NCBI RefSeq assembly: GCF_963921235.1
Contig: NC_086111.1
Span: 23,250,001-23,314,000, forward strand
Source: Mobula hypostoma
Lineage: Eukaryota
Direction: 5' to 3'
DNA length: 64,000 nucleotides
In this document: positions 1,932 through 60,596 of the stretch, one piece after another
Layout of the letters: each line of letters starts with the position of its first letter
Position numbering within the stretch: the first letter of the stretch is position 1
Notes under the pieces: generated by a model
What the model was told of the DNA's origin: nothing
What the model saw: only the letters and a program-made list of their open reading frames with translations
Database searches by the model: none
Position numbers and translations under genes: made by a program

Positions 1932-2073
1932 NNNNNNNNNNNNNNNNNNNNNNNNNNNNNNNNNNNNNNNNNNNNNNNNNNNNNNNNNNNNNNNNNNNNN
2001 NNNNNNNNNNNNNNNNNNNNNNNNNNNNNNNNNNNNNNNNNNNNNNNNNNNNNNNNNNNNNNNNNNNNNNNNN
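1932..2073. other. Assembly gap (142 N)
   Basis: Run of N. Confidence 1.
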
Positions 2074-6269: not shown

Positions 6270-7464
6270 TATATGACTGATACAATTTGGAATACTGCTC
6301 TTTAGGTGAGTAAACTTCCCTGGATTTGTGTGTGTTTGGAGCACAGGCTCAATTCTCATTCAATGATAACTAAGCTGGTTTTACCAAAGGACTGCACTTG
6401 ACATTCTGCCAATCAACAAACCAATTATAGCTCGTTTGACTTGTCCTTTTCCAAAGCTGAAGTGGGATTCTTGGCAAGAGGATTAAAACCATTCACAATT
6501 TCCCATTATGGGTAAATGTGTAATTGAAACTAAAGGCCAAGGCTCAAATATGGGCTATAGATATTTTCTGAAGATCAAATACAAGCCAGTATCCTTAGGT
6601 GAATAATAATGTAATTATAAAAACAGTATTCTGTATATACTCAGCAGGTCAGGCAGCACCTGTGAAGAGAGAAACAATTCAGAGTTCAGTTCAATGGTCT
6701 TTCATCAGGACAAGGAACAGAGAAACAGGTTAAGATACAGAAAGGGCAAGGGGTGAAGAGGGAAAGTATGATTAGAAAGAGGAAAGATGTAAATGAGAGG
6801 AATGATATAGTAAGTAAAAGGCGTAAATGTAGAATATTCTGAAATTATCAAAACAACAGAAGGAATGCTACAAATTATATTAGAGGAGGCTCTAATTTGA
6901 ATTTCTAAAAAATGTGTTATTCCTGATGAAAGAATGTAGGAGGCCAAAAACAGATCAAAGTACAAAAGGGATGGAGAATTAAAGTGACAGTTGATTAGAA
7001 GCTTAGGGCCACAACTGTGGACTGAAGCAAATACAGAAGCCACATTGTGAACAAATGACTGAATATTGCATAGGTAAATCACTGCTTCACATAGAAAATG
7101 TGTTCTGGATTGTGAACAGGAAGGTTACAAATATGCATTAATTGGATTTACTATTGCTGAATGAAAATGGGTAATGGAAATTAAAATATTTTGAAATGAT
7201 TTTCAGACAGGATCAAAAATCCAAAAGGATCAAACTGTTACAAAGTAAAAATATCAAAATTCCTAATATATGGCTCACACTGTTTGGAGCAAAGAACTGC
7301 CAATCCAACACAGAAACAGAAAATGCTAGAAGAGGCAGCATCAGTGGAGAAATATTCAGGACAAGAATATTTCAGAACTAGAATTCTATTATTTGAAAAA
7401 TCTTGTCATTTGATGGTCAAAATTTCCCCATGCCATTTTCTTATGTTGGCCCAAAATGGCAACT

Positions 7465-8002
7465 CAAACATGAGGAATTCTGCAGATGCTGGAAATTCCA
7501 GCAACATACATCAAAGTTGCTGGTGAACGCAGCAGGCCAGGCAGCATCTATAGGAAGAAGTACAGTCGACGTTTCAGGCCCAGACCCTTCGTCAGGACTA
7601 ACTGAAGGAAGAGCTAGTAAGAGATTTGAAAGTGGGAGGGGGAGGGGGAGATCCAAAATGATAGGAGGAAACAGGAGGGGGAGGGATGGAGCCGAGAGCT
7701 GGACAGGTGATTGGCAAAAGGTGATATGAGAGCATCATGGGACAGGAGGCCCAGGGAGAAGGAAAAGGGGGAGGGGGGGGAAACCCAGAGTATGGGCAAG
7801 GGGTATAGTCGGGGGGGGGGAGAGGGGGGAGAGAGAACATGTGTATATAAATAAATAACGGATGGGGTACGAGGGGGAGGTGGGGCATTAGCAGAAGTTT
7901 GAGAAGTCAATGTTCATGTCATCAGGTTGGAGGCTACCCAGACGGAATATAAGGTGTTGTTCCTCCAACCTGAGTGTGGCTTCATCTTTACAGTAGAGGA
8001 GG
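7465..8002 (-). mobile_element. Penelope-like element 3' terminal fragment with 14-bp TSD
   Basis: GIY-YIG C-terminus LLYCKDEATLRLEEQHLIFRLGSLQP. CCAAAATGGCAACT is duplicated at 7451-7464 and 8003-8016. Carries a hammerhead motif. Confidence 0.85.
7564..7599 (-). ncRNA. Minimal type I hammerhead ribozyme motif (intact core)
   Basis: Minus strand reads AGUC CUGACGA AGGGUCUGGGCCU GAAA CGUC^GACU: stem I AGUC/GACU, core CUGANGA and GAAA, GUC triplet, palindromic ACGU stem III. Confidence 0.8.
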
Positions 8003-9451
8003 CCAAAATGGCAACTGTTGTTTTCACCACTGGCAGTATCTGGGTTAATTGAAGCTGGCTCATACCCGAGCAAACAAGTGAATTTTAAATGGCCAACAAA
8101 ACAGCAATGCAAATTACATTAAATCTGGTTTGCCAAAGTCTGGCACCCACAGCAATTAGCAAGTAACTAAAGATCAACAGCATCTCCCAACCTGCTGACA
8201 GGTACTACTGGAAAGGTCATTTTTCTTGAGTCACTGTGGAGCAGGGTTTCAATCTGAAACAATGACAATTGCTTTCTCCTCAAAGATACCGATTGGCCTG
8301 CTAGAGTTTCTCCACCACTGTGTGCTGCTTCATACTTCAACAACTATCTAAAGCTCTCTTGCTTAAAGTCAACTTGCCAGCTTTTTTCCCCTCTGCACAT
8401 TCATTGTAATGCACCTTCCATAACTCATATTACAAAAAAACACAAGAGCCCTGTAGAACTCGACTGAAAAGAAAAGGCTTCCAGTCATTAAAAATGTGTC
8501 AACTACCTACTGCTACCTGCCACTGAGCAAATTTATTAATAACCTTCTCCTTTTGGATACAATGGACTTTTGATCAACCTACAACTGGAGCTTGTCAAAG
8601 CCCGTTAGGCTTCATCTTCCTTGTGGAGACAGCTAAGACATATTCATTAAGAACCCAATTAATATTTTTCCACTTCCAGACAGAGGTAAATGGAAACTTT
8701 GAATCTCTGATAGTTGTCCTGATTTTCTTTATGTAAAACAAGATCTTTGGATTTAATTTTTCCTCTTGCAGTATTCTTTCATGACTTAATTTCCAATGTT
8801 CTTCTTAATTTCACACTTTCTGACCTTTGACTATTAATTTGTCAGCATTCTCACATGCGTAAACTGCTTTTCAGTCAAATGCACTCAATTTTACTTTCAA
8901 GTCATGACCATGTAGGCTGAGATGCCTCCACACAAACCAGTCTTTGCTCAGCCCTGTACAGTTAAAAGGCTTTGGTGCGCTCAAGAACACAGCCAGTATA
9001 CTACTAAGCAATACTGCACTGTCAGAAAGCTAGGTCTTAAATTATTCAGGTAGACAGACTATTCAGAAATGTAAGTTATAATAAAAATGAACCAAAAACT
9101 AATTATGGAAACAAATGTATGAATCAATAGCTGCATAAATCAAATCTGAGATCTTTGAAGCCAGATACACACCTCAAATCCCTCAGAACTAGTCAAGGAA
9201 TGATAGCGATTTTTGATGATTTTCCTAAAATGTTATTTGCCTGCCAGTAGGCAGATTTTTTTTTAAACAGCCAAGATATTGTACAAGCTTTCAGTTAGAT
9301 AAGTCTTTTAACCTTTTCAAGACCAGAACTAACGTTGTCTTTAACAAATAAACAATCATATACCTAAATAATACATTTACTTTGGATTTTGAAATCATTA
9401 TATTTGTAAGTGCAAAGCAATGTGTGCTGTGGCAAACAGGAATCCTCATAA

Positions 9452-10190
9452 GTGCATTTAGTGGCCACTTTATTAGGTACAGGAGGTACCTAATAAAGTG
9501 GTCATTGAGTATATTTGTGATATTTTGCTGCTGTAACCCATCCAATTCAAGATTCAACATATTATTGTGTTCCGCACACCCGTTAACATGTGATCATTTG
9601 AGTTACTGTTGCCTTCCTGTCAGTTTGAACCAGCCCAGCCATTCTCCTCTGAGCTCCCTCATTAACAAAGTGTTTCTTCCCACAGAACTGCTCATTGAGT
9701 GTGTTTTGTTTCTCACATCATTATCTGTAAACTCTAGAGACTGTTCTGTGTGAAAATCCCAGGAGACCAGCAGTTTCTGAGATATTGAAACTACCCCCGT
9801 CTGGCACAATGATTCCACAGTCAAGGTCACTTAGATCACATTTCTTCCTCATTCTGATGTAGAGTCTGAACAACTGAACCTCTTGACATTATGTGCATGC
9901 TTTTATGCCTTGAGCTGCTGCCATCTGATTGGCTGACAACATTCCCCCTAAATTTTTTTTACAGCAATGCAGACCAAGCATTGCTCTGAACAGGACATTT
10001 TCCACGGCTTGAAAACTGCACAACATTGTATATTATCATAAAAAAGAAAATTCCAGCTGTGCCATAAAGGTTATGTGTACGGGAGTGTTGTAGTGACTGT
10101 GATGCTGCGCAGTTTAGAAGGAAGAAAGTGGTGGCTGAATAGGTACTTGCATTAACGAGGTGTACCTCATAAAGTGGGCACTGAGTTTAC
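9452..10190. mobile_element. Tc1-like transposon derivative
   Basis: Terminal motif (C)AGTGGCCACTTTATTAGGTAC and its reverse complement at the ends. The internal part is related, in inverted orientation, to 25860-26320. Confidence 0.65.
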
Positions 10191-10739
10191 TTACACAGAA
10201 CAACAGTGACAGTAATTTGAAGAAACTGTTTCCTTTAGTGAGCCTTGAAAAGTGTTGCTACCATAACAGCCAGATGTGCAGAGTCACTTTCCCTCCCAAT
10301 TAACTACAGGTTCATAGGGTCTCCAATGGGAATTCATCAGAGCGGCAATTAAAAGAAAGATAAACAGGAGAGTATGGCAACGAGCGAACTTCTGAGTACC
10401 GATCCACCTACAAGAATGCAAAACCAAAACTGAGCACTAACCAAATAAGACTGAAAACATCGTGTGGTGCAAATTAATAACACCCGAGTAGCAAATGCAA
10501 ACCACTGAATAATATGGCTTGTAATATTTTGTCTGTACATCGCCCAGCCTCACACCTGCCTACACAAGAGAAACCTCCCGCACCAGCCTTCAAACCCACC
10601 TACACCTACACCCACACCCACCCGCCCCACTCAATTCCCGGGTTCCACACCACCCCGAGGCCTTCCCCACCCCAATCAGTCTCCACAGCCACATACCCCG
10701 CCCCAACCCACCCCGGCTCTCCACCCCCCCCCCACCCCT

Positions 10740-11140
10740 TACCTCCTGCGGCTGAATACGAAGGGGGTAGCACCTAGCCGCCCGCTGCGGTACCGGGCCA
10801 GGCTCTGCTGGCGTTCGCCGTCGGCTGTGTCGGTGACGGCGCCCGAGCCGAAGGGCCAGAAGCTGCGGCCTTTGGAACTGCTGCCGCCCATGTCAGCGGG
10901 AGACCATCCCCAGCGGCCAGGCTCGGGGACGGGCAGAGTGCGGGGAGAGGCCGGAACCGGGGCCGCCACCGCCTGTCGTTCCCCTTCTCCTCACTCGTGT
11001 CAGCGCCAGTCACAAGGACCCCACCTGCGACCAGGAACTGTCTACGCAGCCGCCTGACAGAAGAACAACTTCCGCTCGGTGGGCAGGATGTGACGTTGGT
11101 GCGGGCGAAGCCGGGCTTGGTTACCTGATTTAGGTGGGTG
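10740..11140 (-). promoter_or_regulatory. CpG-rich TUSC2 promoter/5'UTR with ETS-like (GCGGAAGT, ~11068-11075) and CRE half-site (TGACGT, ~11090) motifs
   Basis: Sharp local rise in GC and CpG around the first exon; motifs read directly from the sequence. Confidence 0.7.
10743..10891 (-). CDS. TUSC2: TUSC2 (FUS1) coding exon 1; remaining exons not found in window
   Basis: Translates MGGSSSKGRSFWPFGSGAVTDTADGERQQSLARYRSGRLGATPFVFSRR, resembling human TUSC2 (MGASGSKARGLWPF...PFVFTRRG). Has an N-myristoylation motif G2/S6/K7, Kozak GACATGG, and donor AG|GTAAGG (phase 2). Adjacent to RASSF1 as in human. Confidence 0.93.
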
Positions 11141-11569
11141 CGTTGGTTTGAATGCTCCATTATTACTAACGGACTCTTGTTAATAATAAAATACATGTTT
11201 CATAACATTGCAGTGCTGTTCTTAAACACATGACCAAAAGATATAGCAGTATATGGATCATCTGCAGAGGAGGAGGAATGCTAAATGGAGTGTAATGCGG
11301 GCAAGTGTGAGAGGTTTCCCTTCGGGAGGTCAAATGTAAGGGAATAGTACGTACAGTGTTAATGGCAGGACCTGAACAACCTTGATGTATAGAGGGAACT
11401 CGAGGTCCAAGTCCATAGCACGCTTAATGTGGTGCACAAGTTGATAGGATGGTAAAGAAAGCATATGGCATGCTTGATTTTATTAGTTAAGCCATTAAGT
11501 TGAAGGGTCAGGAAGGTATGTTGCACCTTTGTAGAACTCTGGTTGGGCTGCATCTGGAGTATTGCCTTC

Positions 11570-12095
11570 TAGCAACACACATCAAAGTTGCTGGTGAACG
11601 CAGCAGGCCAGGCAGCATCTCTAGGAAGAGGTGCAGTCGACGTTTCAGGCCGAGACCCTTCATCAGGACTAACTGAAGGAAGTGTGAGTAAGAGATTTGA
11701 AAGTTGGAGGGAGAGGGGGAGATCCAAAATGATAGGAGAAGACAGGAGGGGGAAGGATGGAGCCAAGAGCTGGACAGGTGATTGGCAAAAGGGATATGAG
11801 AGGATCATGGGACAGGAGGTCCGGGAAGAAAGGCAAGGGGGGGGAACCCAGAGGATGGGCAAGGGGTATATTCAGAGGGACAGAGGGAGAAAAAGGAGAG
11901 AGTGAGAAAGAATGTGTGTATAAAAATAAATAACGGATGGGGTACGAGGGGGAGGTGGGGCCTAGCGGAAGTTAGAGAAGTCGATGTTCATGCCATCAGG
12001 TTGGAGGCTACCCAGACGGAATATAAGGTGTTGTTCCTCCAACCTGAGTGTGGCTTCATCTTTACAGTAGAGGAGGACGTGGATAGACATGTCAA
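11570..12095 (-). mobile_element. Penelope-like element 3' terminal fragment, close paralog of 7465-8002
   Basis: Highly similar to the 7.5-8.0 kb copy along its length; same GIY-YIG tail. Confidence 0.85.
11635..11670 (-). ncRNA. Minimal type I hammerhead ribozyme motif (intact core)
   Basis: AGUC CUGAUGA AGGGUCUCGGCCU GAAA CGUC^GACU. Confidence 0.8.
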
Positions 12096-14117
12096 AATGT
12101 CGCTTCCTTCACAGTCATGGGAACATGGAGATGATGTCACTTACATAAAATGAATATGTTTTAGACTTACTCTTACTTTTAAACCCTCTCTTCAGATGGG
12201 TGGGATGAAGTGAGGTCCATTTTGTGGATTTAATGCGTGCATGCCAGCAGATGAGTCCAATTTACTAAAAATATCAGCACTTGCAGAGGCAAGCTCCAAC
12301 ATCCCAACTTCCAGATGAACGTGAGTGCATTTGGCTGCATGTGTCCCACCACCGCAAGTTCAAGTTCAAATTTAATTGTCATTTGCCAAACCCATGGATA
12401 TAGCTAACCAAGACGTTGTTCCTCCATGGCAAGAGTGCAAAACAGAGCACATAGTCACAAAATAATATTACTACAAGTCCCTGAAGATTAATGCTGTGTA
12501 GGAGGTTGTCCTGGTGCTACGTTTCTGCAAGAACAAGTACACAGGAGTTCTTGTCTTGTGCTGGGTCAGCTGCAGATAGAGGCAATCCAGCTTTTCTTTC
12601 AGGGAGTGAACACTGAAGAGCAGCACGTACAGGAGAGCTGGCAAGAGAGGTAGATTAGAGATCGTCATCATTAGATGCTGTGTCGTATGACTTGGCCAAT
12701 CATGGTCTTTGACCATGATTGTTCTTGGCAAAGTTTTCTACAGAAGTGCTTTGCCATGGCCTTCTTAGATTAGAGGAATGGCACTCAGAAACTCAGGAAT
12801 GCACTAAAACTTAGGCAGCCATTGCAAGAGAAAATGATGAAGGTGCTCCTGACTTTGCACGCAATTTAGTTAAAATCTTTGTTGAAACCCCATGAATTAT
12901 TTAGCTTTGATTGTAAGTGAATGACAACTGATGATGTGCAACTGTTAAGTAAAATGAGTAACTTGACTTGTAATGAAATTGCTGACTTAAATGCTCTGTA
13001 ATAATACTTCCGAATTATTTCAAGAATGAAGTGTATTTTGAACTGATTTGAATATTTCAATTACCAATATTTTAAACAGAATCTGAATTCAACAAGGTTT
13101 TCATAGAATTTCCTGAAGCATGCCTTTGAAACTAAGGCAAAAAGAAACAAATTTGTTGTGTCCATTAGATGTCAGATAAGTACTCAAAAAATTATTCAGA
13201 GCATGTGATGCTTTCTTCCATTTATAAGGGATTTATTGATAAATCTTCTAGCTAATTTGTGTACTTAGGCATTATGGCTCACTATCAGGATGGGTGAAGC
13301 CATCTTTGCCTTTAGGAGGATCTGAGAAATATATCTGCACACTCAAGATTGTGTTTCAGTAAGAGGCAACAACATTGGATCTCAATATCACATGTCTTTG
13401 GGTCCTTATTTTTGATGCAACACATCACCACAGCGATCAAGGAAACAGTCTCAGTGCCTGCCTGTATGACTGCTGCTTTCACGGGAAGGAGAATGGTAAG
13501 AAAATAGAGCTGCAAGAGTATTCACACAAATTTAGTTCTCCAAATGCATCCGTACATCACTGAAAATGGCCTTGCGAGTTGCCTTCATTGGTCAAACCAT
13601 TGTGTGTAAGAGTCAAAAAGCCATATTGCAGCTACATTAACGTTTGGTTAGGCCTCATTTGGAATATTAGGTGCAATTCTGGTTGCCCCATTGCAGGACA
13701 GATGTAGAGTATTTGGAAAGGGTGCAGAAGATGTTTACCAGAATGCTGCCTGGATTGAAGGGTATGAGCTAGAAGGAGAGCTTGGACAAACAGGTTATTT
13801 ACTGTAGAGCATCAGCGGCGGAAGAGTCCGTCATCAGGGACCCCCACCACCCAGGTCACGCTCTCTTCTCGCTGCTGCCATCAGGGAGAAGGTACAGGAG
13901 CCTCAGGACTCGCACCACCTGGTTCAAGAACAGTTACTACACCACAACCATCAAGTTCTTGAACAAAAAGAGAACTACACTCAACTTCACTTGCCCCATC
14001 ATTGAAATGTTCCCACAACCAATGAACTCGTTTTCAAGGACTCTTCATCTCATATTCTTGTTATTTATTGCTGTTTTGTTATATTTACATTTCTACAGTT
14101 TGTTCTCTTCTGCACTC

Positions 14118-16357
14118 TAGAAACATAGAAACATTGGAAATAGGTGCAGGAGTAGGCCATTCGGCCCTTCGAGCCTGCACTGCCATTCAGTATGATCATG
14201 GCTGATCATCCAACTCAGAACCCTGCACCAGCCTTCCCTCCATATTCCCTGATCCCTTTAGCCACAAGGGCCATATCTAACTCCCTCGTAAATATAGCCA
14301 ATGATCTGGCCTCAACTGTTTCCTGTGGCAGAGAATTCCACACATTCACCACTCTCTGTGTGAAGAAGTTTTTCCTAATCTTGGTCCTAAAAGGCTTCCC
14401 CTTTATCCTCAAACTGTGATCCCTCGTTCTGGACTTCCCCAACATCAGGAACAATCTTCCTGCATCTAGCCTGTCCAATCCCTTTAGGATTTTATACGTT
14501 TCAATCAGATCCCCCCTCAATCTTCTAAATTCCCACGAGTATAAGCCTAGTTCATCCAGTCTTTCATCATATGAAAGTCCTGCCATCCCAGGAATCAATC
14601 TGGTGAACCTTCTTTGTACTCCCTCTATGGCAAGGATGTCTTTCCTCAGATTAGGGGACCAAAACTGCACACAATACTCTAGGTGTGGTCTCACCAAGGC
14701 CTTGTACAACTGCAGTAGTATCTCCCTGCTCCTGTACTCGAATCCTCTTGCTATAAATGCCAGCATACCATTCGCCTTTTTCACTGCCTGCTGTACCTGC
14801 ATGCCCGCTTTCAATGACTGGTGTATAATGACACCCAGGTCTCGTTGCACCTCCCCTTTTCCTAATCGGCAACCATTCAAATAATAATCTGTTTTCCTGT
14901 TTTTGCCACCAAAGTGGATAACCTCACATTTATTCACATTAAATTGCATCTGCCATGAATTTGCCCACTCGCCTAACCTGTCACCCTGCATCTTCTTAGC
15001 ATCCTCCTCACAGTTAACACTGCCGCCCAGCTTCGTGTCATCCGCAAACTTGGAGATGCTGCATTTAATTCCCTCATCTAAGCCATTAATATATATTGTA
15101 AACAACTGGGGTCCCAGCACTGAGCCTTGCGGTACCCCACTAGTCACTGCCTGCCATTCTGAAAAGGTCCCGTTTATTCCCACTCTTTGCTTCCTGTCTG
15201 CCAACCAATTCTCTATCCACATCAATACCATACCCCCAATACCGTGTGCTTTAAGTTTGCACACCAATCTCCTGTGTGGGACCTTGTCAAAAGCCTTCTG
15301 AATATCCAAGTATACCACATCCACTGATTCTCCCCTATCCACTCTACTAGTTACATCCTCAAAAAATTCTATGAGATTCGTCAGACATGATTTTCCTTTC
15401 ACAAATCCATGCTGACTTTGTCCGATGATTTCACCGCTTTCCAAATGTGCTGTTATCACATCTTTGATAACTGACTCTAGCAGTTTCCCCACCACCGATG
15501 TTAGGCTAACCGGTCTATAATTCCCTGGTTTCTCTCTCCCTTTTTTAAAAAGTGGGGTTACATTAGCCACCCTCCAATCCTCAGGAACTAGTCCAGAATC
15601 TAAAGAGTTTTGAAAAATTATCACTAATGCATCCACTATTTCTTGGGCTACTTCCTTGAGCACTCTGGGATGCAGACCATCTGGCCCTGGCGATTTATCT
15701 GCCTTTAATCCCTTCAATTTACCTAACACCACTTCCCTACTAACATGTTTTTCCCTCAGTTCCTCCATCTCACTGGACTCTTTGTCCCCTACTATTTCCG
15801 GAAGATTATTTATGTCCTCCTTAGTGAAGACAGAACCAAAGTAATTATTCAATTGGTCTGCCATGTCCTTGCTCCCCATAATCAATTCACCTGTTTCTGT
15901 CTGTAGGGGACCTACATTTGTCTTAACCAATCTTTTTCTTTTCACATATCTATAAAAGCTTTTACAGTCAGTTTTTATGTTCCCTGCCAGTTTTCTCTCA
16001 TAATCTTTTTTCCCCTTCCTAATTAAGCCCTTTGTCCTCCTCTGCTGAACTCTGAATCTCTCCCAGTCCTCAGGTGAGCCACTTTTTCTGGCTAATTTGT
16101 ATGCTTCTTCTTTGGAATTGATACTATCCCTAATTTCCCTTGTCAGCCACGGGTGCACTACCTTCCTTGATTTATTCTTTTGCCAAACTGGGATGAACAA
16201 TTGTTGTAGTTATCCATGCGATCTTTAAATGCTTGCCATTGCATATCCACCGTCAACCCTTTAAGTGTTATTTGCCAGTCTATCTTAGCTAATTCACGTC
16301 TCATACCTTCAAAGTTACCCTTCTTTAAGTTCAGAACCTTTGTTTCTGAATTAACTA
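14118..16357 (-). mobile_element. Young CR1 LINE, 5'-truncated, with a 661-codon open RT frame, inserted in a Rex-Babar 3' fragment
   Basis: ORF 14215-16200 contains KSPGPDG, NYRPVSL, QGSVLGP and KFADD; (TGTTTCTA)n tail at 14118. Confidence 0.93.
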
Positions 16358-18024: not shown

Positions 18025-19399
18025 TATAACAAAATCCAGGTTTAGGTTTAGCACTTTAGCATATTTATCTGAGTGGAAGAATATCTCGTTCCATGACTCT
18101 ACAAAATGTTGAAATATGGCTTCTAAATCTGCATTGTGGATCAATGGCAGCAGATGGCAGCAGCAGAATGAGTTACTGCTTGGAACTGCTATCCAAATGT
18201 TTTACTTTGATGCTTGAAAGAGCATTAGGTCACCTGTAAAACAAAGTGCAAGTATTTAATATAAGTACAGGAACACTGCACTGAGAACAATAGCTTCCAT
18301 TATGCTATACATCATAAACTGCAGTTAATCATAAACCCGAGAAATTCTGTTAGAAATCCAAAGCAACACACAAAATGCTGGAGGAACTCAGTAGATCAGG
18401 CAGCATCTATAGACATGAATAAACAGTTGATGTTTTGGGCCAAGACCCTTTTTCAGGACTGGGAAGGAAGAGAGAAGATGCCACTGCAGTTAATGTGTTA
18501 CAGGTTTGAGTCTCTTCTCCAGATATTTGACCTTAAATTCTATTTAGCAGTGCAGCACAAAGGTGCTATCCTTACATAGGATATAAAACTAGCCTCTATT
18601 TTTCCACAAGATTAATATAAATAATCATGAACTATGGTACCTTCTTTGATGCCTTTGAACTAGTATTTAAACTTAAATAAACATTACTTAAGAGCAGGTT
18701 TCCCAAACAATCATAACTCTTTCAGCATTTCCCAGTTGACAATTAACTTTTGTTTGAAGTGGAATCAACAATGGCAATTTCTAAGCCATTATATGTTTCT
18801 CTTAAAATTTGAAAGTCACTTTCACATGTGTGTCAGCTTCACCACTTTGACTAGATTTGGAAACAGGCCCTGTCCAAGCTTCAACTTTCCTATTCTCCAG
18901 TCTGATCCTCTTGACCATTTTGCTCTTTGCCCTCAACCATTTCTCAATCTCCTTCCTTACTGGATTATTTCCCAAAGATACAGTACAACCCTCTGCTCCC
19001 CTCCCAATCTTTGGTTGTGATCATGAGCTTCTCTTCCAGATTCTAGACTATGGATCTGGACTATGAATCTTTGGTCAATCATTGGACAAGGCCCTTTTTT
19101 TTCCTGCACTTACTCAGTCACAACACTGGCATGATCCTATTTCCCACGTTGCCCCACCAACTATAGCACAGGTCCCAATTGGCTGACAGCTATCAGATCT
19201 CTAGCACCTACACTGGCCACACCACAACCCTAAAATTGCCTCACTCCTGGGCACACACATCAAAGTTGCTGGTGAACGCAGCAGGCCAGGCAGCATCTCT
19301 AGGAAGAGGTACAGTCGACGTTTCGGGTCGAGACCCTTCGGCAGCACTCCTGTACAACACATTTTCACTCCATCAAGGTGAAGGGAAAGTCTTGAGCCT

Positions 19400-32924: not shown

Positions 32925-34633
32925 TCCCCCAAGTTCAGTCCCTTCCTACCTACATCCATGATACTTCACATGCTCTGGGTCTTTCAATGATTTCAGGTTC
33001 CCTGACTCCTATTATCTTATTTTTACAATGGATGCCCAGTCCCTATACCTCAAAGCTCACTGTTTCTTTCTGGACACCAGACCAAACCAGTTCTCCTCCA
33101 CCACCACTCTCCTCTGTCTAGCAGATCTTGTCCACACTTTTAATAATTTCTCCTTTGGCTCCACCCACTTTCTTCAAACAAAAGGTGTAACCATGGGCAC
33201 TCGCAAGGGTCCCAGCTGTGCCTGACTTTTTGTCGGCTACATGGAACAGTCTATGTTCCTAGCCTACACAGGTATCTGTCCCCCACTCTTCCTATGCTAT
33301 GGCTTACTTACAGATGTTTATTATATGCCTATGGACTCTCACGGCTACCCGCATTATACCTCTTCCCACCGTTACTTGTAAAAATGCCATCCCTTCTCTT
33401 AGTTCCTCTGCCACATCTGCTCTCAGGATGAGGCTTTTCATTCCAGGAGAAGGAGATGTCCTCCTTTTTCAAAGAAAGGGTCTTTCCTTCCTCCACCATC
33501 AACATTGCCCTCAATCACATCTCTTCCATTTCACACACATCTACTCTCACTCCATCCTCCCACCACCCTGACAGGGATAGGGTTCCTCTTGTCCTCACCT
33601 ACCACCCCACCAGCCTCCATGTCCAGCACAAAATTCTATGTAGCTTCCGCCATGTACAATGGGATCCCACCACCAGGCACATCTGTCCCTCCCCCCCCCC
33701 CCACTTTCTGCAGGGATTGCTCCCTGTGACTCCCTTGTCCATTCCCCTCCCCCTCCCCCCACTGATCTCCCACCTGGCATTTATCCTTGCAAACAGAACA
33801 AGTGCTACACCTCCCTCCTCACCACCATTCAGGCCCTAAACAGTCCTGGGAGGGGACATTTCACCTGTGAGACTGTTGTGGTCATCTACTGTACCTGGTG
33901 CTCGTGATGTGGCCTCTTATATATTGATGAGACCCTACGTAGATTGGGAGACCGCTTCACTGAGCATCTACGCTGTCCACCAGAAGAAATTAGATCTCCC
34001 AGTAGCCATCTGTTTTAATTCCACTTCCCATTCCCATTCCGATGTCAATCCTTTGCCGCCTCTACTGTCGCGATGAGGCTACACTCAGGACCCTTATTTT
34101 GTCTGGGTAGCCTCCAACCTGACGACATGAACATAGATTTCTCAAACTTCTGGTATTGCACCCCCCCCCCTTCACCATTCCCCATCCCCTTGTCCTCTCA
34201 CCTCACCTCCTTGCTTGTCCAATGCCTCCCTCTGGTGCTCTTCCTCCCTTCTGTACTACTACTACGTCGACTCGGGCCTAGGGGGCCGGCGTCGGGCACA
34301 ATGACGGACTCTCCACTTCTCCCTCGCCCTCATCAGTGTGTCTGTCCTCTCCTATTATATCCCCCTTCTCCAGCCCTGTTTTACTTTCACAGATCAACTT
34401 CCCAGCTCATTACTTCATCCCTCCCTCTTCAGGTTTCACCTGTTGCCTTGTGTTTCTCCCTACCCTTCCAGTTGTAATTCTACTCATCGTTTTTTCTTCA
34501 GTCCTGCTGAAGGGTTTCGGCCCAAAAGAGTGACTGTATTCTTTTCCATAGATGCTGCCTGGCCTGCTGAGTTCCACCAGCATTTTGTGTGTGTTGCCTG
34601 GATTTCCAGCATCTGCAGATTTTCTTATTTGTG
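32925..34633 (+). mobile_element. Penelope-like element (decayed RT, linker, GIY-YIG, terminus), inserted in a minus-strand CR1 (32850-35190)
   Basis: QTKGVTMGTRKGPS, RVPLVLTYHP and FTCE..VIYC.WC fragments; hammerhead-like motif at 34500-34536. Confidence 0.85.
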
Positions 34634-35544
34634 CTAAGATAAATCTAACTCTTCCCTCCTACGCAACCCTGTTTTTCTAATATCTGTGTGCCTATGACTT
34701 TCTTAAATCCCCTTGGTGTATCTGACTCTACCACCACCCCTCGTAGGGTGTTCCATTCACTCACCACTCCTTGTTTTTAAAAAATACTTAACCCTGGCAT
34801 CCCTACCCCTTTCTTCAAATCACCTTAAAATGATGCCCCTGGTATGAGACATTTCTGCCCTGGGAAAGTCTCTCGCTGTCCACTCGAGCTACAAACGTTT
34901 GTATATCTCTTATCAGCTTGTACATCTCTATCAAGTTACCTCTCATCTTCCTTCACTCCAGAAAGATAAGATTTAGCTCGCACAACCTGCCCTCATTAAA
35001 CGTGCTCTCTAATCCAGGCTGCATCCTTGTAAATTTGCTCTGCACTCTCTCTAGAGCTTCCACATTCTTACTATAATGAGGTGACCAGAACTGAACATAA
35101 TTTTCCAAGTGTTTACAGAGCTGCAACTCTTGAACTCACCCCACTGACTGATGAAGGCCAACATCCCATATGCCTTCTTTACAACCATATCATCTGGTAG
35201 AAATTTTCCCCAAAGGACTAATTGTACTCAAAACTTATTATTAAAACCAAGTGGCCGTTAATAAATACAGACCAAAAAGTCAAGAGTAGTCAGATCCTGA
35301 AACCATCTGTGACAGATACCACAGTAAAATTAAATAGGAACTGTTGAGATTGCAGAATTAATAAACGTTGATAGAAGAGTGTAATTATAACATTGAGACA
35401 GCAGGATCTGGAAAGAGGAAATTTAAGCCATATGTATGACTTTGTTTTTACAAGTGGTTTTAAAATATGTACATTTAGAAAGGCAATTTGAAGTAGAGTT
35501 TTGTCTTAGAACTTGGGGAGGGCACATCACTGGACACAAAGTAA

Positions 35545-37911: not shown

Positions 37912-38058
37912 TCAACCAGGGGAGCGGTTGGCGAGCTCCTCTTGCATCTTCTGCCGGCAACGGGCGTACTTTCCGAACATCTGCCTGACGTGCTCCTCCT
38001 CCTCCCGCTGTAGGATTCTCAGGAAGTTCTGCAGCTCCGGTAGAGTGAAGGCATCCCA
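37912..38058 (-). CDS. RASSF1: RASSF1 last coding exon (SARAH domain)
   Basis: Polypyrimidine tract and ttcag|TGG. WDAFTLPELQNFLRILQREEEEHVRQMFGKYARCRQKMQEELANRSPG followed by TGA. Confidence 0.96.
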   Translation of the reverse strand, partial: WDAFTLPELQNFLRILQREEEEHVRQMFGKYARCRQKMQEELANRSPG

Positions 38059-38674
38059 CTGAACAAAGAAGAGAAAAGAAAGAAAAACACCCATGGTCAC
38101 CGCTCCTCACAAACTCATTTTACCTCCGCTCCTAAGTCACAATAGCACATCTGTGGCTCTTCTAGGGTGGAACAGTGAAAGTCATTGGACTTTATATGCT
38201 GCTTCCCTTGTTTTCAGGACAGTCAAAGTGCTTTATAACCCCAATATCATTACTGTCATGATATAGAAAACAAAGCTGCCAATTTGTAAATGACAAGCTT
38301 CCACAAAACCAATGAAATAAGGACTGTTTAGCTCTGTTTTTATAATTTGATTTTGCAGCCCTGCTGTCCTTCAATCTCATCCTACATCAAAGGCAGCAGT
38401 ACCTTGGTTTAATGTTGTGTCTGAAAGAAAGCACCTTGTGTACCCCTCTCATGCGGAACTAAAATATGTGCTCAACTTTCTGGGCATGGGTTCTGATAAC
38501 ATGACTGTGTCTCAGAGGTGAGTGTTTTACCAAGTTGATACATCTATTCGTTGTCTTGGTCCTTCATTGTGATTTAATTGACACCATTTTGAAAGCTCTA
38601 TGAGCTGTTTCCTGTGACTAAAGATGAGCTCAGATGTAAGGTGTCTGCGTGCTCATTTTAGCCAGAAATGTTAC

Positions 38675-45734: not shown

Positions 45735-46038
45735 CTTGATCGTCTTTCTCAATCCGTTCAAACAGGGCAAACTTGCGGGGATTATCCACCACCATGAACT
45801 TGTTGAGCAGTGCTTTGATCACCTCACTGGCCTTTGTGTGGCTGCTGATGTGCAAGTGTTTTACGGTGTCCTTCGGGAGGTAGAAGGACGTGCGGCGCTT
45901 TATCGACTGCGGCCGTGCTGGCGTTGCTGCTTTCTTGGCGTCGTAAATTGACTGAGGCTTCGTGTTTGCAGAGACAGAGATTGGCCTTACCAACTTCAGC
46001 TGCACCTTTATGAACCCGGTGTATGTACCGTCACTGTT
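45735..46038 (-). CDS. RASSF1: RASSF1 exon 4 equivalent (start of Ras-association domain)
   Basis: ccacag|AAC...CAA G|gtatgt, 304 nt. NSDGTYTGFIKVQLKLVRPISV...RRTSFYLPKD...KFMVVDNPRKFALFERIEKDDQ. Confidence 0.96.
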
Positions 46039-58388: not shown

Positions 58389-58487
58389 CAATCATCTGCA
58401 CTTCTTCCAATCCTGTGTACTGCATTTCGTGCTCGCAATGTGGTCTCCTCTACATCAGGGGAAAAAAAGAAATGCAGACAAGGTCAA

Positions 58488-59768
58488 GGCGCACAAAATG
58501 CTGGAGGAACTCAGCAAGTCAAGTGGCATCTAGGAAAAGGAGTGCAATCGACGTTTCGGGCCGAAACCCTTCGGCAGGACTGGAGAGAACAAAGCTGAGG
58601 TGGATTTAAAAGGGAGGGGGGGAGAAGCACAAGGCGATAGGCGAATCCCGGAGGGGGAAGGATGAAGCAAAGAGCTGGGGAGTTGATTGGGGAAGGAGAC
58701 AGAAGGCTATTGAAGAAAGAAAAGGGGGGAGGAGCACCAGAGGGGGGCGATGGGCGGGCAGGGAGATAAGGTGAGAGAGGGAAAAGGGGATGAGAAATGG
58801 TGAAGTGGGGGGGGCATTACCGGAAGTTTGAGAAATCGATGTTCATGCAATCAGGTTGGAGGCTGCCCAAACGGAACACAAGGTGTTGTTCCTCCAACCT
58901 AAGTGTGGCTTCATCACCACAGTGGAGGAGGCCATGGATGGACGTATCGGAATGGGAATGGGAAGTGGAATTAAAGTGGGTGGCCACTGGGAGATCCTGC
59001 TTGTTCTGGCGGATGCAGCGTAGGTACTCGGCGAATCAGACTCCCAATCTACGTCGGGTCTCACAGGAGGCCGCACCGGGAGCACCGGACACTGTATATG
59101 ACCCCAGCAGACTCACAGGTGAAGTGTCGCCTCACCTGGAAGGACTGCTTAGGGCCCTGAATGGTGGTGAGGGAGGAGGTGTAGGATCAGGTGCGGCACT
59201 TGTTCTGTTTGCAAGGGTAAGTGTCAGGAGGGAGATCAGTGAGGAGGGGCAAGGGAGTCGCGTAGGGAGCGATCCTTGTGCAAAGCAGAAAGTGCGGGGG
59301 TGGGAGGGGGAGAGGGGAAATGCGCTTGGTGCTGGGATCCCTTGGAGGTGGCGGAAGTTTCGGAGAATTACGTGCTGGTCACGGAGACTGGTGGGGTGGC
59401 AGGTGAGGACAAGCGGATCCCTATGCCTGGTAGAGTGGCAGGATGGTGGGGTAAAAGCAGATATGCGTGAAATGGAAGAGATACGGTTGAAGGCAGCGTT
59501 GATGGTGGAAGATGGGAAGCCCCTGTCTTTGGAAAAGGAGGACATCTCCTTCGTTCTAGAATGAAAAGCCTCATCCTGAGAGCAGATGCAGCAGAGACGG
59601 GTGAATTGAGAGAAGGGCGTGGCTTATTTTAAACAAATAACAGGGTGTGACGAGGTACCGTCCAGGTAGCTCTGAGAGTCAGTGAGTTTATAATAGACAT
59701 CGGCGGATAAGCTGTCTTCGGAGATAGAGGCAGTGAAATCGAGAAAGGGGAGGGAGGTGTCGGAAATG
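58488..59768 (-). mobile_element. Penelope-like element 3' half
   Basis: MSSFSKDRGFPSSTINAAFNRISS...PLVLTCHPTS; GIY-YIG remnants; terminal hammerhead variant at 58546-58581. Confidence 0.87.
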
Positions 59769-60596
59769 CACACCTACAGATTAGGTGCCTATGTTCAGTG
59801 TGCAGGACAATGCTGAAGTTATCTCCCTATTGCTCGCCACCTTTATGCTCCATAGATAAGAGTGGACGTGGAGAGGGACAGAGGGTATTATCTCAGAATA
59901 GGACGTCCCATTAGAATGGAAATAAGAAAGAACTTCTTTAGCCAGAGGGTGGTGAACCTGTAGGATTCATTGCCACATACAGCTGTGGAGGCCAAGTATT
60001 TGGGTATATTTAAAGCAGAGGTTGATAGGTTCTTGATTAGCAAGCATGTCAAAAGCTTCAGGGAGAAGGCAGGAGAAAGCGTGGAGAGGAATAATAAATC
60101 AGCCATGATCAAGAGGTGGAGCAGACTTAACAGACGGACTGGCCTAATTCTACTCTGATGGCTGATGGTCATCCCACTCTCATTCCGACTCATTGGTCTG
60201 TGAACTCCTGTACTGCTACAATGTGGCCCAGCACAAGCCCGAGGAACAGCACCTCATCTTCCATCTGGGAACACTGCGACCAAACGCATTTAATACTGAA
60301 TTCCGTACCTTGATTTCCCTGTCTGTATCAGTCACCCACCTGTAGTATTTCAGCTTGTTTGTGCTTCAACCCTTCCTGGGCGTGACCTGCCGGGAATGTC
60401 TTCCTGCTCTGTATTTCACAAGTCCAACATTCTTTTGTCTACCTTTTCACTCTCTTGACAGCTCTCATTCATTGACCATATAACCTTGTGAATAATTTAT
60501 AACCCAGTTATACCCTGTCAGAGACATACCTCATCCGGATGGGCTGTACACTAAACTTCTCTCTCTCCCTCCCCACTCTGACGAAAGGTTTTTGAG

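What the first reader, a model, noticed from the sequence alone, without database searches (positions are those of the whole stretch)
7564..11670. Two intact minimal hammerhead ribozymes in Penelope-derived elements bracket the TUSC2 promoter, one sense in intron 1
Seen: both minus-strand copies (7564-7599, 11635-11670) read AGUC-CUGA[C/U]GA-stemII-GAAA-CGUC^GACU, with predicted cleavage at 7568/7567 and 11639/11638. Stem III is only the palindrome ACGU. Known: PLEs carry minimal type I hammerheads with very short palindromic stem III that are thought to work mainly as dimers. Inference: this very common repeat end (about ten copies or relics in 64 kb) seeds the genome with half-ribozymes that could cleave when two copies meet in one RNA or in trans. 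The 7.5-kb copy is transcribed in TUSC2 pre-mRNA. Both copies would share one RNA in upstream-initiated or RASSF1 read-through transcripts.
Basis: partly seen in the sequence, partly recalled or inferred. Interest (0 to 1): 0.75.

Follow-up and report, generated by a model that had tools for sequence, protein, structure and literature searches.

The report
Penelope hammerhead motifs around TUSC2 promoter
Two dead fragments of a Penelope-like jumping gene, each carrying that family's already known miniature hammerhead (self-cutting RNA) motif, lie just upstream of a ray's TUSC2 gene and inside its first intron; they look like ordinary passengers, not a working RNA-cutting device.

Summary
Both 36-nt minus-strand motifs sit exactly where stated, with complete hammerhead core boxes, a 4-bp helix I and ACGU as the only helix III.

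They belong to two 5'-truncated retrocopies (about 530 bp) of a Penelope-like element (PLE). Each has the ORF end, a 3' UTR, the hammerhead and the terminal region. The 7.5-kb copy also has a perfect 14-bp target-site duplication and the optional PLE "tail". I count 11-13 relics in the window; only these two keep the core.

The gene context is right. RNA contigs define TUSC2 exon 1 (at least 11050 down to 10743, GT donor) between the copies, so the 7.5-kb copy is sense in intron 1.

The functional reading is not supported:
- The motif is the published PLE minimal hammerhead, which cuts poorly even as a dimer and, in the anole element, only with PLE protein.
- Both copies have G10.1·U11.1 instead of G-C.
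- Nearest-neighbour energies favour an inactive hairpin over the double hammerhead.
- The 7.5-kb insertion is absent from a related species.
- The TUSC2 start lies between the copies.
- RASSF1 ends 26 kb upstream.
- Only contigs were available, so RNA ends could not be examined.

This scan has already reported the same motif many times on other pieces of this genome. Ordinary; low interest.

The parts
7465..8002 (-). 5'-truncated Penelope-like element copy 1 (538 bp): ORF C-terminal remnant, 3' UTR, minimal hammerhead, terminal box and optional tail
   Evidence: It is 89.6% identical to copy 2 over 519 nt; alignments are. The empty site in organism C joins 7447 to 8001 (X11 record 10). Both junctions are present in organism B (X6 records 25 and 26).
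8003..8016 (-). Target-site duplication, 5' copy (14 bp, AGTTGCCATTTTGG)
   Evidence: Exact 14-mer shared with 7451-7464.
7451..7464 (-). Target-site duplication, 3' copy
7564..7599 (-). Minimal hammerhead motif 1. Core CUGACGA / GAAA, C17 at 7568, predicted cut 7568/7567; G10.1.U11.1; a private change in loop II at 7581.
   Evidence: The family letter at 7581 differs in 76-93% of laid depth (table 3).
7465..7500 (-). Optional ~36-nt PLE 'tail' extension. Present in the 7.5k, 34k, 50k, 18k and 36k copies; absent in 11.6k, 19k, 58k, 53k and 55k.
   Evidence: Alignment. The feature is described as unique to PLEs in PMC11167929.
7888..8002 (-). C-terminal remnant of the element's ORF (...DEATLRLEEQHLIFRLGSLQPD.MNIDFSNF, stop at 7888-7890)
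   Evidence: ORF 7888..8112. The same ORF end occurs in the 11.6k, 58k and 34k copies. No Pfam match.
11571..12099 (-). 5'-truncated Penelope-like element copy 2 (about 530 bp, no tail, no recognisable TSD; boundaries +/- a few bases)
   Evidence: Family contigs diverge from it at 12099 and 11571-11575 (table 7). The 5' junction is present in organism B (X6 record 31).
11635..11670 (-). Minimal hammerhead motif 2. Core CUGAUGA / GAAA, C17 at 11639, predicted cut 11639/11638; G10.1.U11.1.
10743..11050 (-). TUSC2 exon 1 (minimum extent). ATG at 10891, GT donor at 10742-10741.
   Evidence: RNA contigs X5 record 23 (depth 327) and X10 record 8 (depth 141) both end at 10743. Sequence. Pfam TUSC2 profile positions 1-52, E=0.026, below cut-off.
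6623..6724 (-). Degenerate PLE tail relic in TUSC2 intron 1 (keeps CUGAUGA but has lost GAAA and CGUC)
19244..19348 (-). Short PLE tail copy that starts at the hammerhead's 5' edge; core position 6 is C
58480..59800 (-). Larger decayed PLE fragment (frameshifted ORF pieces plus 3' end); hammerhead with C at position 6
34092..34660 (+). PLE copy with tail; hammerhead core decayed
37912..38100 (-). Last coding exon of a RASSF1-like gene (SARAH domain), stop at 37912-37914
   Evidence: Nore1-SARAH E=1.7e-17; ORF. The RA-domain exon is at 45736-45996, E=1.2e-9.

Best explanation
Both motifs are the minimal type I hammerhead that Penelope-like retrotransposons carry near their ends. Here they sit in two dead, 5'-truncated retrocopies of one young subfamily. 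One copy inserted about 520 bp or more upstream of the TUSC2 transcript start. The other inserted, in sense, into TUSC2 intron 1, after the lineage split from a related species (organism C). In the active element the motif lies about 70-100 nt upstream of the sites where reverse transcription starts. There it is thought to process tandem element transcripts as a double hammerhead or with help from the element's protein. In these solitary copies it is a passenger. As a monomer it has no helix III and is predicted to fold into a hairpin that pairs G5-G8 with the cut-site CGUC. No partner motif lies in the normal TUSC2 pre-mRNA. So it most likely does nothing to TUSC2 RNA. Shown: sequence, family, insertion anatomy, gene context, lineage-specific presence. 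Inferred: lack of activity.
For: - Motif and core letters.
- Insertion anatomy: 14-bp TSD, 5' truncation within the ORF end, and the optional 30-40 bp tail described as unique to PLEs (PMC11167929).
- Empty site in organism C and filled site in organism B (table 8).
- TUSC2 exon 1 lies between the copies.
- Monomer MFE is an inactive hairpin at -10.0 / -8.2 kcal/mol. The double hammerhead scores -9.5, against -16 to -20 for two monomers and -25 to -34 for non-hammerhead dimers.
- Published activity: no monomer cleavage and low dimer activity (PMC4209133). The anole PAc motif cuts only with PLE protein, core mutants still insert, and no RNA-seq ends were found at the cut site (PMC11167929).
- Three sister copies from two subfamilies share C at invariant core position 6. 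This suggests source elements spread with a dead core.
Against: - Both core boxes survived although the motif held five CpGs, while 9 of 11 relics lost them. These two are simply the youngest copies, but weak selection cannot be excluded.
- Nearest-neighbour energies ignore tertiary contacts and protein chaperones.
- PLE-tail RNA is very abundant in the two RNA runs (table 2), so partners for trans pairing exist in the cell.
- Low-level RNA-run coverage upstream of the TUSC2 start (depth about 5, like the intron) could mean that rare transcripts span both copies. It could equally be genomic DNA background.
- RNA ends could not be examined, because no raw reads were available.
Confidence: 0.85

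Rival explanations
1. The two copies, or one copy and any other PLE-tail RNA, pair into a double hammerhead. This cuts TUSC2 pre-mRNA or upstream/read-through transcripts at 7568/7567 and 11639/11638 and lowers or gates TUSC2 expression.
For: Helix I and the ACGU helix III are self-complementary between copies, so a nested double-hammerhead structure can be drawn. Dimer cleavage of PLE motifs is reported in vitro (PMC4209133; Lunse et al. 2017, cited in PMC6765202). PLE-tail RNA is abundant in the RNA runs.
Against: - The TUSC2 transcript start (at or above 11050) lies between the copies.
- RASSF1 ends 26 kb upstream.
- The double-hammerhead fold is about 7-10 kcal/mol worse than two inactive hairpins.
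- Both copies have G.U at 10.1-11.1.
- Published dimer activity is low and needs high Mg2+.
- The insertion is not conserved.
- TUSC2 exon 1 is well expressed relative to the intron (depth 327 against 3-7), and spliced contigs exist.
- Earlier notes of this scan list many intact sense-intron copies in other genes. That argues against a strong cost, but I did not test it.
Confidence: 0.05
2. Protein-assisted monomer cleavage. Where an active PLE protein is expressed, it binds the terminal region of the intronic copy and folds the motif into a cleaving form, as reported for anole PAc. TUSC2 pre-mRNA would then be cut only in such cells.
For: PMC11167929 reports that the PAc hammerhead cuts only when PAc protein is added and that endonuclease mutants do not abolish this. 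The 7.5-kb copy keeps the whole terminal region, including the tail, that should hold the protein-binding and RT-initiation site.
Against: [quoted passage not shown]
- No intact PLE ORF is in this window; the 58-59.8 kb fragment is frameshifted.
- Helix II of both copies is weakened.
- No data on activity exist for this ray family.
Confidence: 0.06
3. The copies matter as DNA, not as ribozymes. PLE terminal regions carry promoter activity, so the 11.6-kb copy, which sits in sense about 0.5 kb upstream of TUSC2, could act as an alternative promoter or regulatory element.
For: PLE terminal repeats are reported to contain promoters (review PMC6765202). The 11.6-kb copy has the same orientation as TUSC2. 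There is low RNA-run coverage at 11228-11424.
Against: Coverage upstream of 11050 (depth about 5) is no higher than in the intron or at 12213-12400, so it looks like background. The copy is 5'-truncated and may lack the promoter part. No contig joins the copy to exon 1 (table 8).
Confidence: 0.04

Closest known systems
Minimal hammerheads (min-HHR) of metazoan Penelope-like elements (Cervera & De la Pena 2014, PMC4209133; Lunse, Weinberg & Breaker 2017)
   Same: [quoted passage not shown]
   Different: Helix II here is only 4 bp with a tetraloop, whereas the described schistosome families have 7-8 bp. These two copies have G.U instead of the conserved G10.1-C11.1. The host is a ray, which the 2014 paper does not list.
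Hammerhead of the anole Poseidon element PAc (Frangieh et al. 2024, PMC11167929)
   Same: The motif lies about 70-100 nt upstream of the two alternative 3' ends of genomic copies (the optional 30-40 bp tail). In the 11.6-kb copy an AUG inside the core box opens an ORF with the cut site 24 nt downstream; in PAc it is 26 bp downstream.
   Different: No biochemical data exist for the ray family. Whether the element's ORF really starts at that AUG is unknown, and other copies have C or A at that position.
Double hammerheads of newt satellite 2 and avocado sunblotch viroid (Forster et al. 1988, cited in PMC4209133)
   Same: A weak or absent helix III, so activity is expected only when two motifs pair.
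   Different: Those motifs lie in tandem multimeric transcripts a few hundred nt apart. Here the two motifs are 4.07 kb apart and are separated by a transcription start.
Conserved intronic hammerheads of amniotes (Rfam HH9, HH10; recalled from my own knowledge of De la Pena & Garcia-Robles 2010)
   Same: Sense orientation in an intron of a protein-coding gene.
   Different: Those are complete monomeric ribozymes with a stable helix III and loop-loop contacts, kept at orthologous sites. This one has no helix III, gets no Rfam match and is absent from a related species.
Non-LTR retrozymes (PMC7229834; bioRxiv 10.64898/2026.07.22.740005)
   Same: Type I hammerheads related to PLE terminal regions; present in Chondrichthyes.
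   Different: Retrozymes are tandem repeats that yield circular RNAs. These are single truncated PLE copies with an ORF remnant.

Membership tests
PLE minimal hammerhead (min-HHR) | Catalytic boxes C3-A9 (CUGANGA), G12-A14 (GAAA), A15.1-U16.1 and H17 | tested here: met
   Both copies have exact matches. The other 9 relics each fail at one or more positions.
PLE minimal hammerhead (min-HHR) | [quoted passage not shown] | tested here: met
   An extra A follows the CUGAYGA box in both copies and in nearly all relics. The feature is listed in PMC4209133.
PLE minimal hammerhead (min-HHR) | Conserved G10.1-C11.1 pair | tested here: inconclusive
   Both copies have G.U, which is still pairable. The 19k, 58k, 34k and 18k copies have G-C, so the ancestral state fits and the change is a CpG transition. 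This is decay of a member, not a different architecture.
PLE minimal hammerhead (min-HHR) | No loop 3; palindromic 15.2-16.2 (helix III only between two molecules) | tested here: met
   GAAA is followed directly by CGUC, giving ACGU.
PLE minimal hammerhead (min-HHR) | Short helix I (4-5 bp) and base-paired helix II | tested here: met
   AGUC/GACU plus one U.G; helix II is 4 bp. On the 11 window copies 81.5% of cells pair, against 19-46% when partners are slid. Covariation is not above shuffles (48/500 and 235/500).
PLE minimal hammerhead (min-HHR) | Self-cleavage as a dimer | not testable with these tools
   Only contigs were available, so no RNA ends. Energies disfavour the active fold.
Penelope-like element | ORF with RT and C-terminal GIY-YIG endonuclease | tested here: inconclusive
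   The ORF end is shared by four copies. The 58-59.8 kb fragment reads like a Cys-rich GIY-YIG region by eye. Against that: Pfam gave no match, PDB gave none, the Atlas gave none, and the homologue search gave one unnamed hit.
Penelope-like element | Optional 30-40 bp 'tail' at the 3' end of a fraction of copies | tested here: met
   Five copies end about 36-45 nt later than five others, at a shared sequence. PMC11167929 describes this as unique to PLEs.
Penelope-like element | Target-primed insertion marks: TSD and 5' truncation | tested here: met
   Perfect 14-bp TSD and a precise empty site for the 7.5-kb copy. No TSD was found for the 11.6-kb copy.
Rfam hammerhead families (type I/II/III, HH9, HH10) | Match to the covariance model | tested here: not met
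   No match at gathering score in the window. No hammerhead match at E<=10 in 7480-7680.
Conserved intronic ribozyme | Presence at the orthologous site in related species | tested here: not met
   A contig of organism C lacks 7448-8000. Organism B has both junctions.

The most novel reading that the evidence does not exclude
The tens of thousands of half-hammerheads spread by this PLE family, many of them sense in introns, might occasionally pair in trans or be folded by PLE protein. They would then cut host pre-mRNAs such as TUSC2. PLE activity would in that case impose a ribozyme-mediated cost or regulation on host genes.
Probability: 0.04. Interest if true: 0.7.

Novelty: new member of a known kind. 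Interest (0 to 1): 0.15.

Why it matters
If solitary PLE hammerheads cut host pre-mRNAs, a retrotransposon would be spreading a trans-acting RNA-cleaving activity through genes. That would be a new route from transposon activity to gene expression. The evidence here points the other way. These are ordinary, recently inserted, decaying copies of a known motif, and their position around the TUSC2 start is incidental. The useful outcome is an annotation: a dated insertion with an empty site, TSD and tail, and the TUSC2 exon 1 boundaries. It also gives a reason not to treat each sense-intron copy in this genome as a separate discovery.

Tried and rejected
- Rfam at gathering score and at E<=10: no hammerhead family matched. 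This is uninformative for a motif that lacks helix III.
- Covariation on the 11 window copies: not above shuffles. There are too few copies and they are decayed, so this speaks neither for nor against the structure.
- Protein evidence for the Penelope ORF gave nothing usable. Pfam on six ORF pieces, PDB sequence search and the ESM Atlas found nothing. One homologue search found a single unnamed 166-aa hit, whose precomputed Pfam tag was not reproduced.
- TUSC2 exons 2 and 3: motif scans of all six frames found nothing in readable sequence. Its flanks show no obvious splice signals.
- RNA ends: all 24 runs offered are stored as contigs, so starts, ends and strand cannot be seen (table 6: none).
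- Joints between the two copies (for example 7635->11713) occur in both DNA and RNA runs, or have short sides. I read them as contigs of other family members aligned in mosaic, not as deletions or ligation products. No listed joint links the two cut sites.
- Lunse et al. 2017 (PMC5785218) is not held in the library. I cite it only through the review PMC6765202.
- I built no consensus of the element and did not join exon pieces into a spliced model. Exon pieces were searched separately, by reference.
Full report
**Observation**

The order is:
- a 4-nt helix I strand (AGUC);
- the box CUGACGA (7.5-kb copy) or CUGAUGA (11.6-kb copy);
- an extra A;
- 12 nt of helix II and loop;
- GAAA, then CGUC, then GACU.

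C17 is at 7568 and 11639, so the predicted cut sites are correct. Helix III is only A15.1-C15.2 / G16.2-U16.1 with no loop (ACGU). A degenerate pattern finds these two exact matches and two one-mismatch copies, against 0.14 expected from shuffles. The excess comes from a repeat family, not from independent chance. Rfam finds no hammerhead at gathering score or at E<=10 around the first motif. The curated models require a helix III hairpin, so this is expected.

**What carries the motifs**

The two motifs lie in copies that are 89.6% identical over 519 nt (8002-7496 against 12076-11567). Each copy begins inside the end of an ORF (...DEATLRLEEQHLIFRLGSLQPD.MNIDFSNF, then a stop). It continues through about 290 nt of C-rich 3' UTR. 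It ends with the hammerhead and a conserved terminal box.

The 7.5-kb copy runs 8002->7465 and is flanked by a perfect 14-bp duplication (8016-8003 and 7464-7451). The 11.6-kb copy runs about 12099->11571 and has no recognisable duplication.

Using the copies themselves as blastn queries, I find 11 alignable terminal relics and a few scraps in the 64 kb. This confirms 'about ten'. Only the two named copies keep every core letter.

Across subfamilies the UTR upstream of the motif is barely alignable, at 57% mean column identity. The 36-nt motif scores 79% and the downstream box 83%. So the motif and the terminal box are kept together as a block. The motif is not better kept than its 3' flank. 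Covariation in helices I and II on these 11 decayed copies does not exceed shuffles.

**Family assignment**

Cervera and De la Pena (PMC4209133) defined the minimal hammerhead of metazoan Penelope-like elements by these features:
- the core boxes;
- a G10.1-C11.1 pair;
- palindromic 15.2-16.2 with no loop 3;
- a 4-5 bp helix I;
- a position in the terminal repeats.

They found thousands of mostly solitary copies from truncated elements, fishes included. Every feature is met here except one. In both copies 11.1 is U, so the closing pair of helix II is G.U. Four sister copies still have C, and the change is a CpG transition.

A second, independent PLE mark is the optional 30-40 bp 'tail', which Frangieh et al. 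(PMC11167929) describe as unique to PLEs and explain by two internal reverse-transcription start sites. In the window five copies (7.5k, 34k, 50k, 18k, 36k) extend about 36-45 nt beyond the point where five others (11.6k, 19k, 58k, 53k, 55k) end.

Protein evidence for the ORF is weak. Pfam, PDB and the Atlas gave nothing, and one homologue search gave a single unnamed hit. The 58-59.8 kb fragment reads like a Cys-rich GIY-YIG region only by eye. I therefore file the copies as PLE-derived on the RNA-motif, tail, duplication and truncation evidence.

Earlier notes of this scan on other pieces of the same genome reached the same classification many times. They call the host a devil ray and give more than 80,000 intact-looking copies. 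I did not test those numbers.

**Gene context**

An ORF at 10969-10739 (minus) contains MGGSSSKGRSFWPFGSG...ATPFVFSRRR. It matches positions 1-52 of Pfam TUSC2 weakly (E=0.026, below cut-off).

Two runs that behave as RNA (X5, X10) give contigs covering 10743-11050 and 10743-10949, at depth 327 and 141. The surrounding unique sequence is at depth 2-7, and DNA runs show about 6. Both contigs end at 10743, which is followed by GTAAGG. The X10 contig continues for 708 nt that do not lie in 6500-12400. So TUSC2 exon 1 lies between the two copies, the transcript starts at or above 11050, and the 7.5-kb copy is sense in intron 1.

Exons 2 and 3 were not found in readable sequence. I did not touch the N stretch at 1932-2073.

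A RASSF1-like gene is on the same strand upstream, with an RA-domain exon at 45736-45996 and a SARAH exon at 37915-38100. Its stop codon is at 37912, 26 kb from the 11.6-kb copy. Read-through would therefore have to be very long.

RNA-run depth upstream of the start (about 5 at 11228-11424, about 6 at 12213-12400) equals intron depth. It could be rare transcripts or genomic DNA background. The contigs cannot tell these apart.

**Age**

A DNA contig of organism C (about 3-6% diverged) joins 7447 directly to 8001, which is a precise empty site. Contigs of organism B (about 2% diverged) run 25 nt into the element at both junctions (table 8). The 7.5-kb insertion therefore arose after the split from C and before the split from B.

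The 5' junction of the 11.6-kb copy is also present in B. Its state in C was not shown. There is no deep conservation of either motif at its site.

**Would it cut?**

- As a monomer, each 36-mer is predicted to fold into a hairpin in which G5-G8 pair with the cut-site CGUC. The energies are -10.0 and -8.2 kcal/mol, against -6.0 for helices I and II alone.
- The nested double-hammerhead structure (two intermolecular helices I, a 4-bp helix III, two helices II) evaluates to -9.5 kcal/mol. Two monomer hairpins give -16 to -20, and non-hammerhead dimers give -25 to -34. These numbers omit tertiary contacts and proteins, so they are only indicative.
- They do agree with experiment. A single schistosome motif showed no activity, and dimers or trimers showed low activity, mostly at unphysiological Mg2+ (PMC4209133).
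- The anole PAc motif cut only when PAc protein was present. Core mutants still inserted, and no RNA-seq reads began or ended at the cut site (PMC11167929).
- In the window, three copies from two subfamilies share C at invariant position 6, a transversion. This suggests that source elements spread with a dead core.
- The normal TUSC2 pre-mRNA contains one intact motif and one degenerate relic (6623-6724), so it has no partner.
- No listed joint links the two cut sites. The joints between the copies occur in DNA runs too, or have short sides, and I read them as mosaic alignments of other family members.

**Verdict**

The functional inference is unsupported and mostly restates the published dimer hypothesis. 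The most likely reading (about 0.85) is two passenger copies of a known PLE motif. The rivals are dimer or trans cleavage, protein-assisted cleavage, and promoter exaptation. Each has about 0.04-0.06 and all are testable as listed under the next steps. Novelty: a new member of a known kind. The scan has already reported this motif many times on other pieces of this genome.

Noticed in passing
window 11508-11663 (-): In the 11.6-kb copy N7 = U, so the core box CUGAUGA contains an AUG (11663) that opens a 51-aa ORF running through the terminal box. The cut site is 24 nt downstream of it. Anole PAc has the ORF start at helix II and the cut site 26 bp downstream (PMC11167929). The ray element's ORF may also start inside the hammerhead. 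Other copies have C or A at N7, so this is unresolved.
   Followed up: partly
window 19313-19348, 58546-58581, 34500-34535: Three copies from two subfamilies share C at invariant core position 6 (CUGC[C/U]GA). As a shared transversion it probably came from source elements with a catalytically dead core. If so, cleavage is dispensable for spread.
   Followed up: partly
window 7465-7500 and equivalents in the 34k, 50k, 18k and 36k copies: There are two classes of 3' end, with and without a ~36-45 nt extension. This fits the optional PLE 'tail' attributed to two internal reverse-transcription start sites.
   Followed up: yes
window 14215-16200 (-): An uninterrupted 661-aa ORF that, by eye, carries reverse-transcriptase motifs of another (LINE-like) retroelement; possibly a young copy.
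   Followed up: no
window 9455-10045: A second very high-copy repeat inside TUSC2 intron 1 (summed contig depth up to 3x10^5 in DNA runs); not identified.
   Followed up: no
window 12100-37900: The RASSF1 stop codon (37912) and the TUSC2 start (about 11050) are about 27 kb apart and the gap is full of retroelement copies. From memory, the two genes lie much closer in mammals.
   Followed up: partly
window 1932-2073: A 142-N stretch on the TUSC2 strand, downstream of intron 1. TUSC2 exons 2 and 3 were not found in readable sequence.
   Followed up: no
window 7485-7681 and 11425-12212 (table 2): Summed contig depth on the PLE end is about 3x10^6 in a DNA run, against about 6-8 on unique sequence. 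In an RNA run it is about 3x10^5, against 327 on TUSC2 exon 1. Per genomic copy the RNA signal is no higher than intron background. That suggests passive transcription of the many copies rather than a highly expressed element. The tool warns that these depths are a poor measure.
   Followed up: partly
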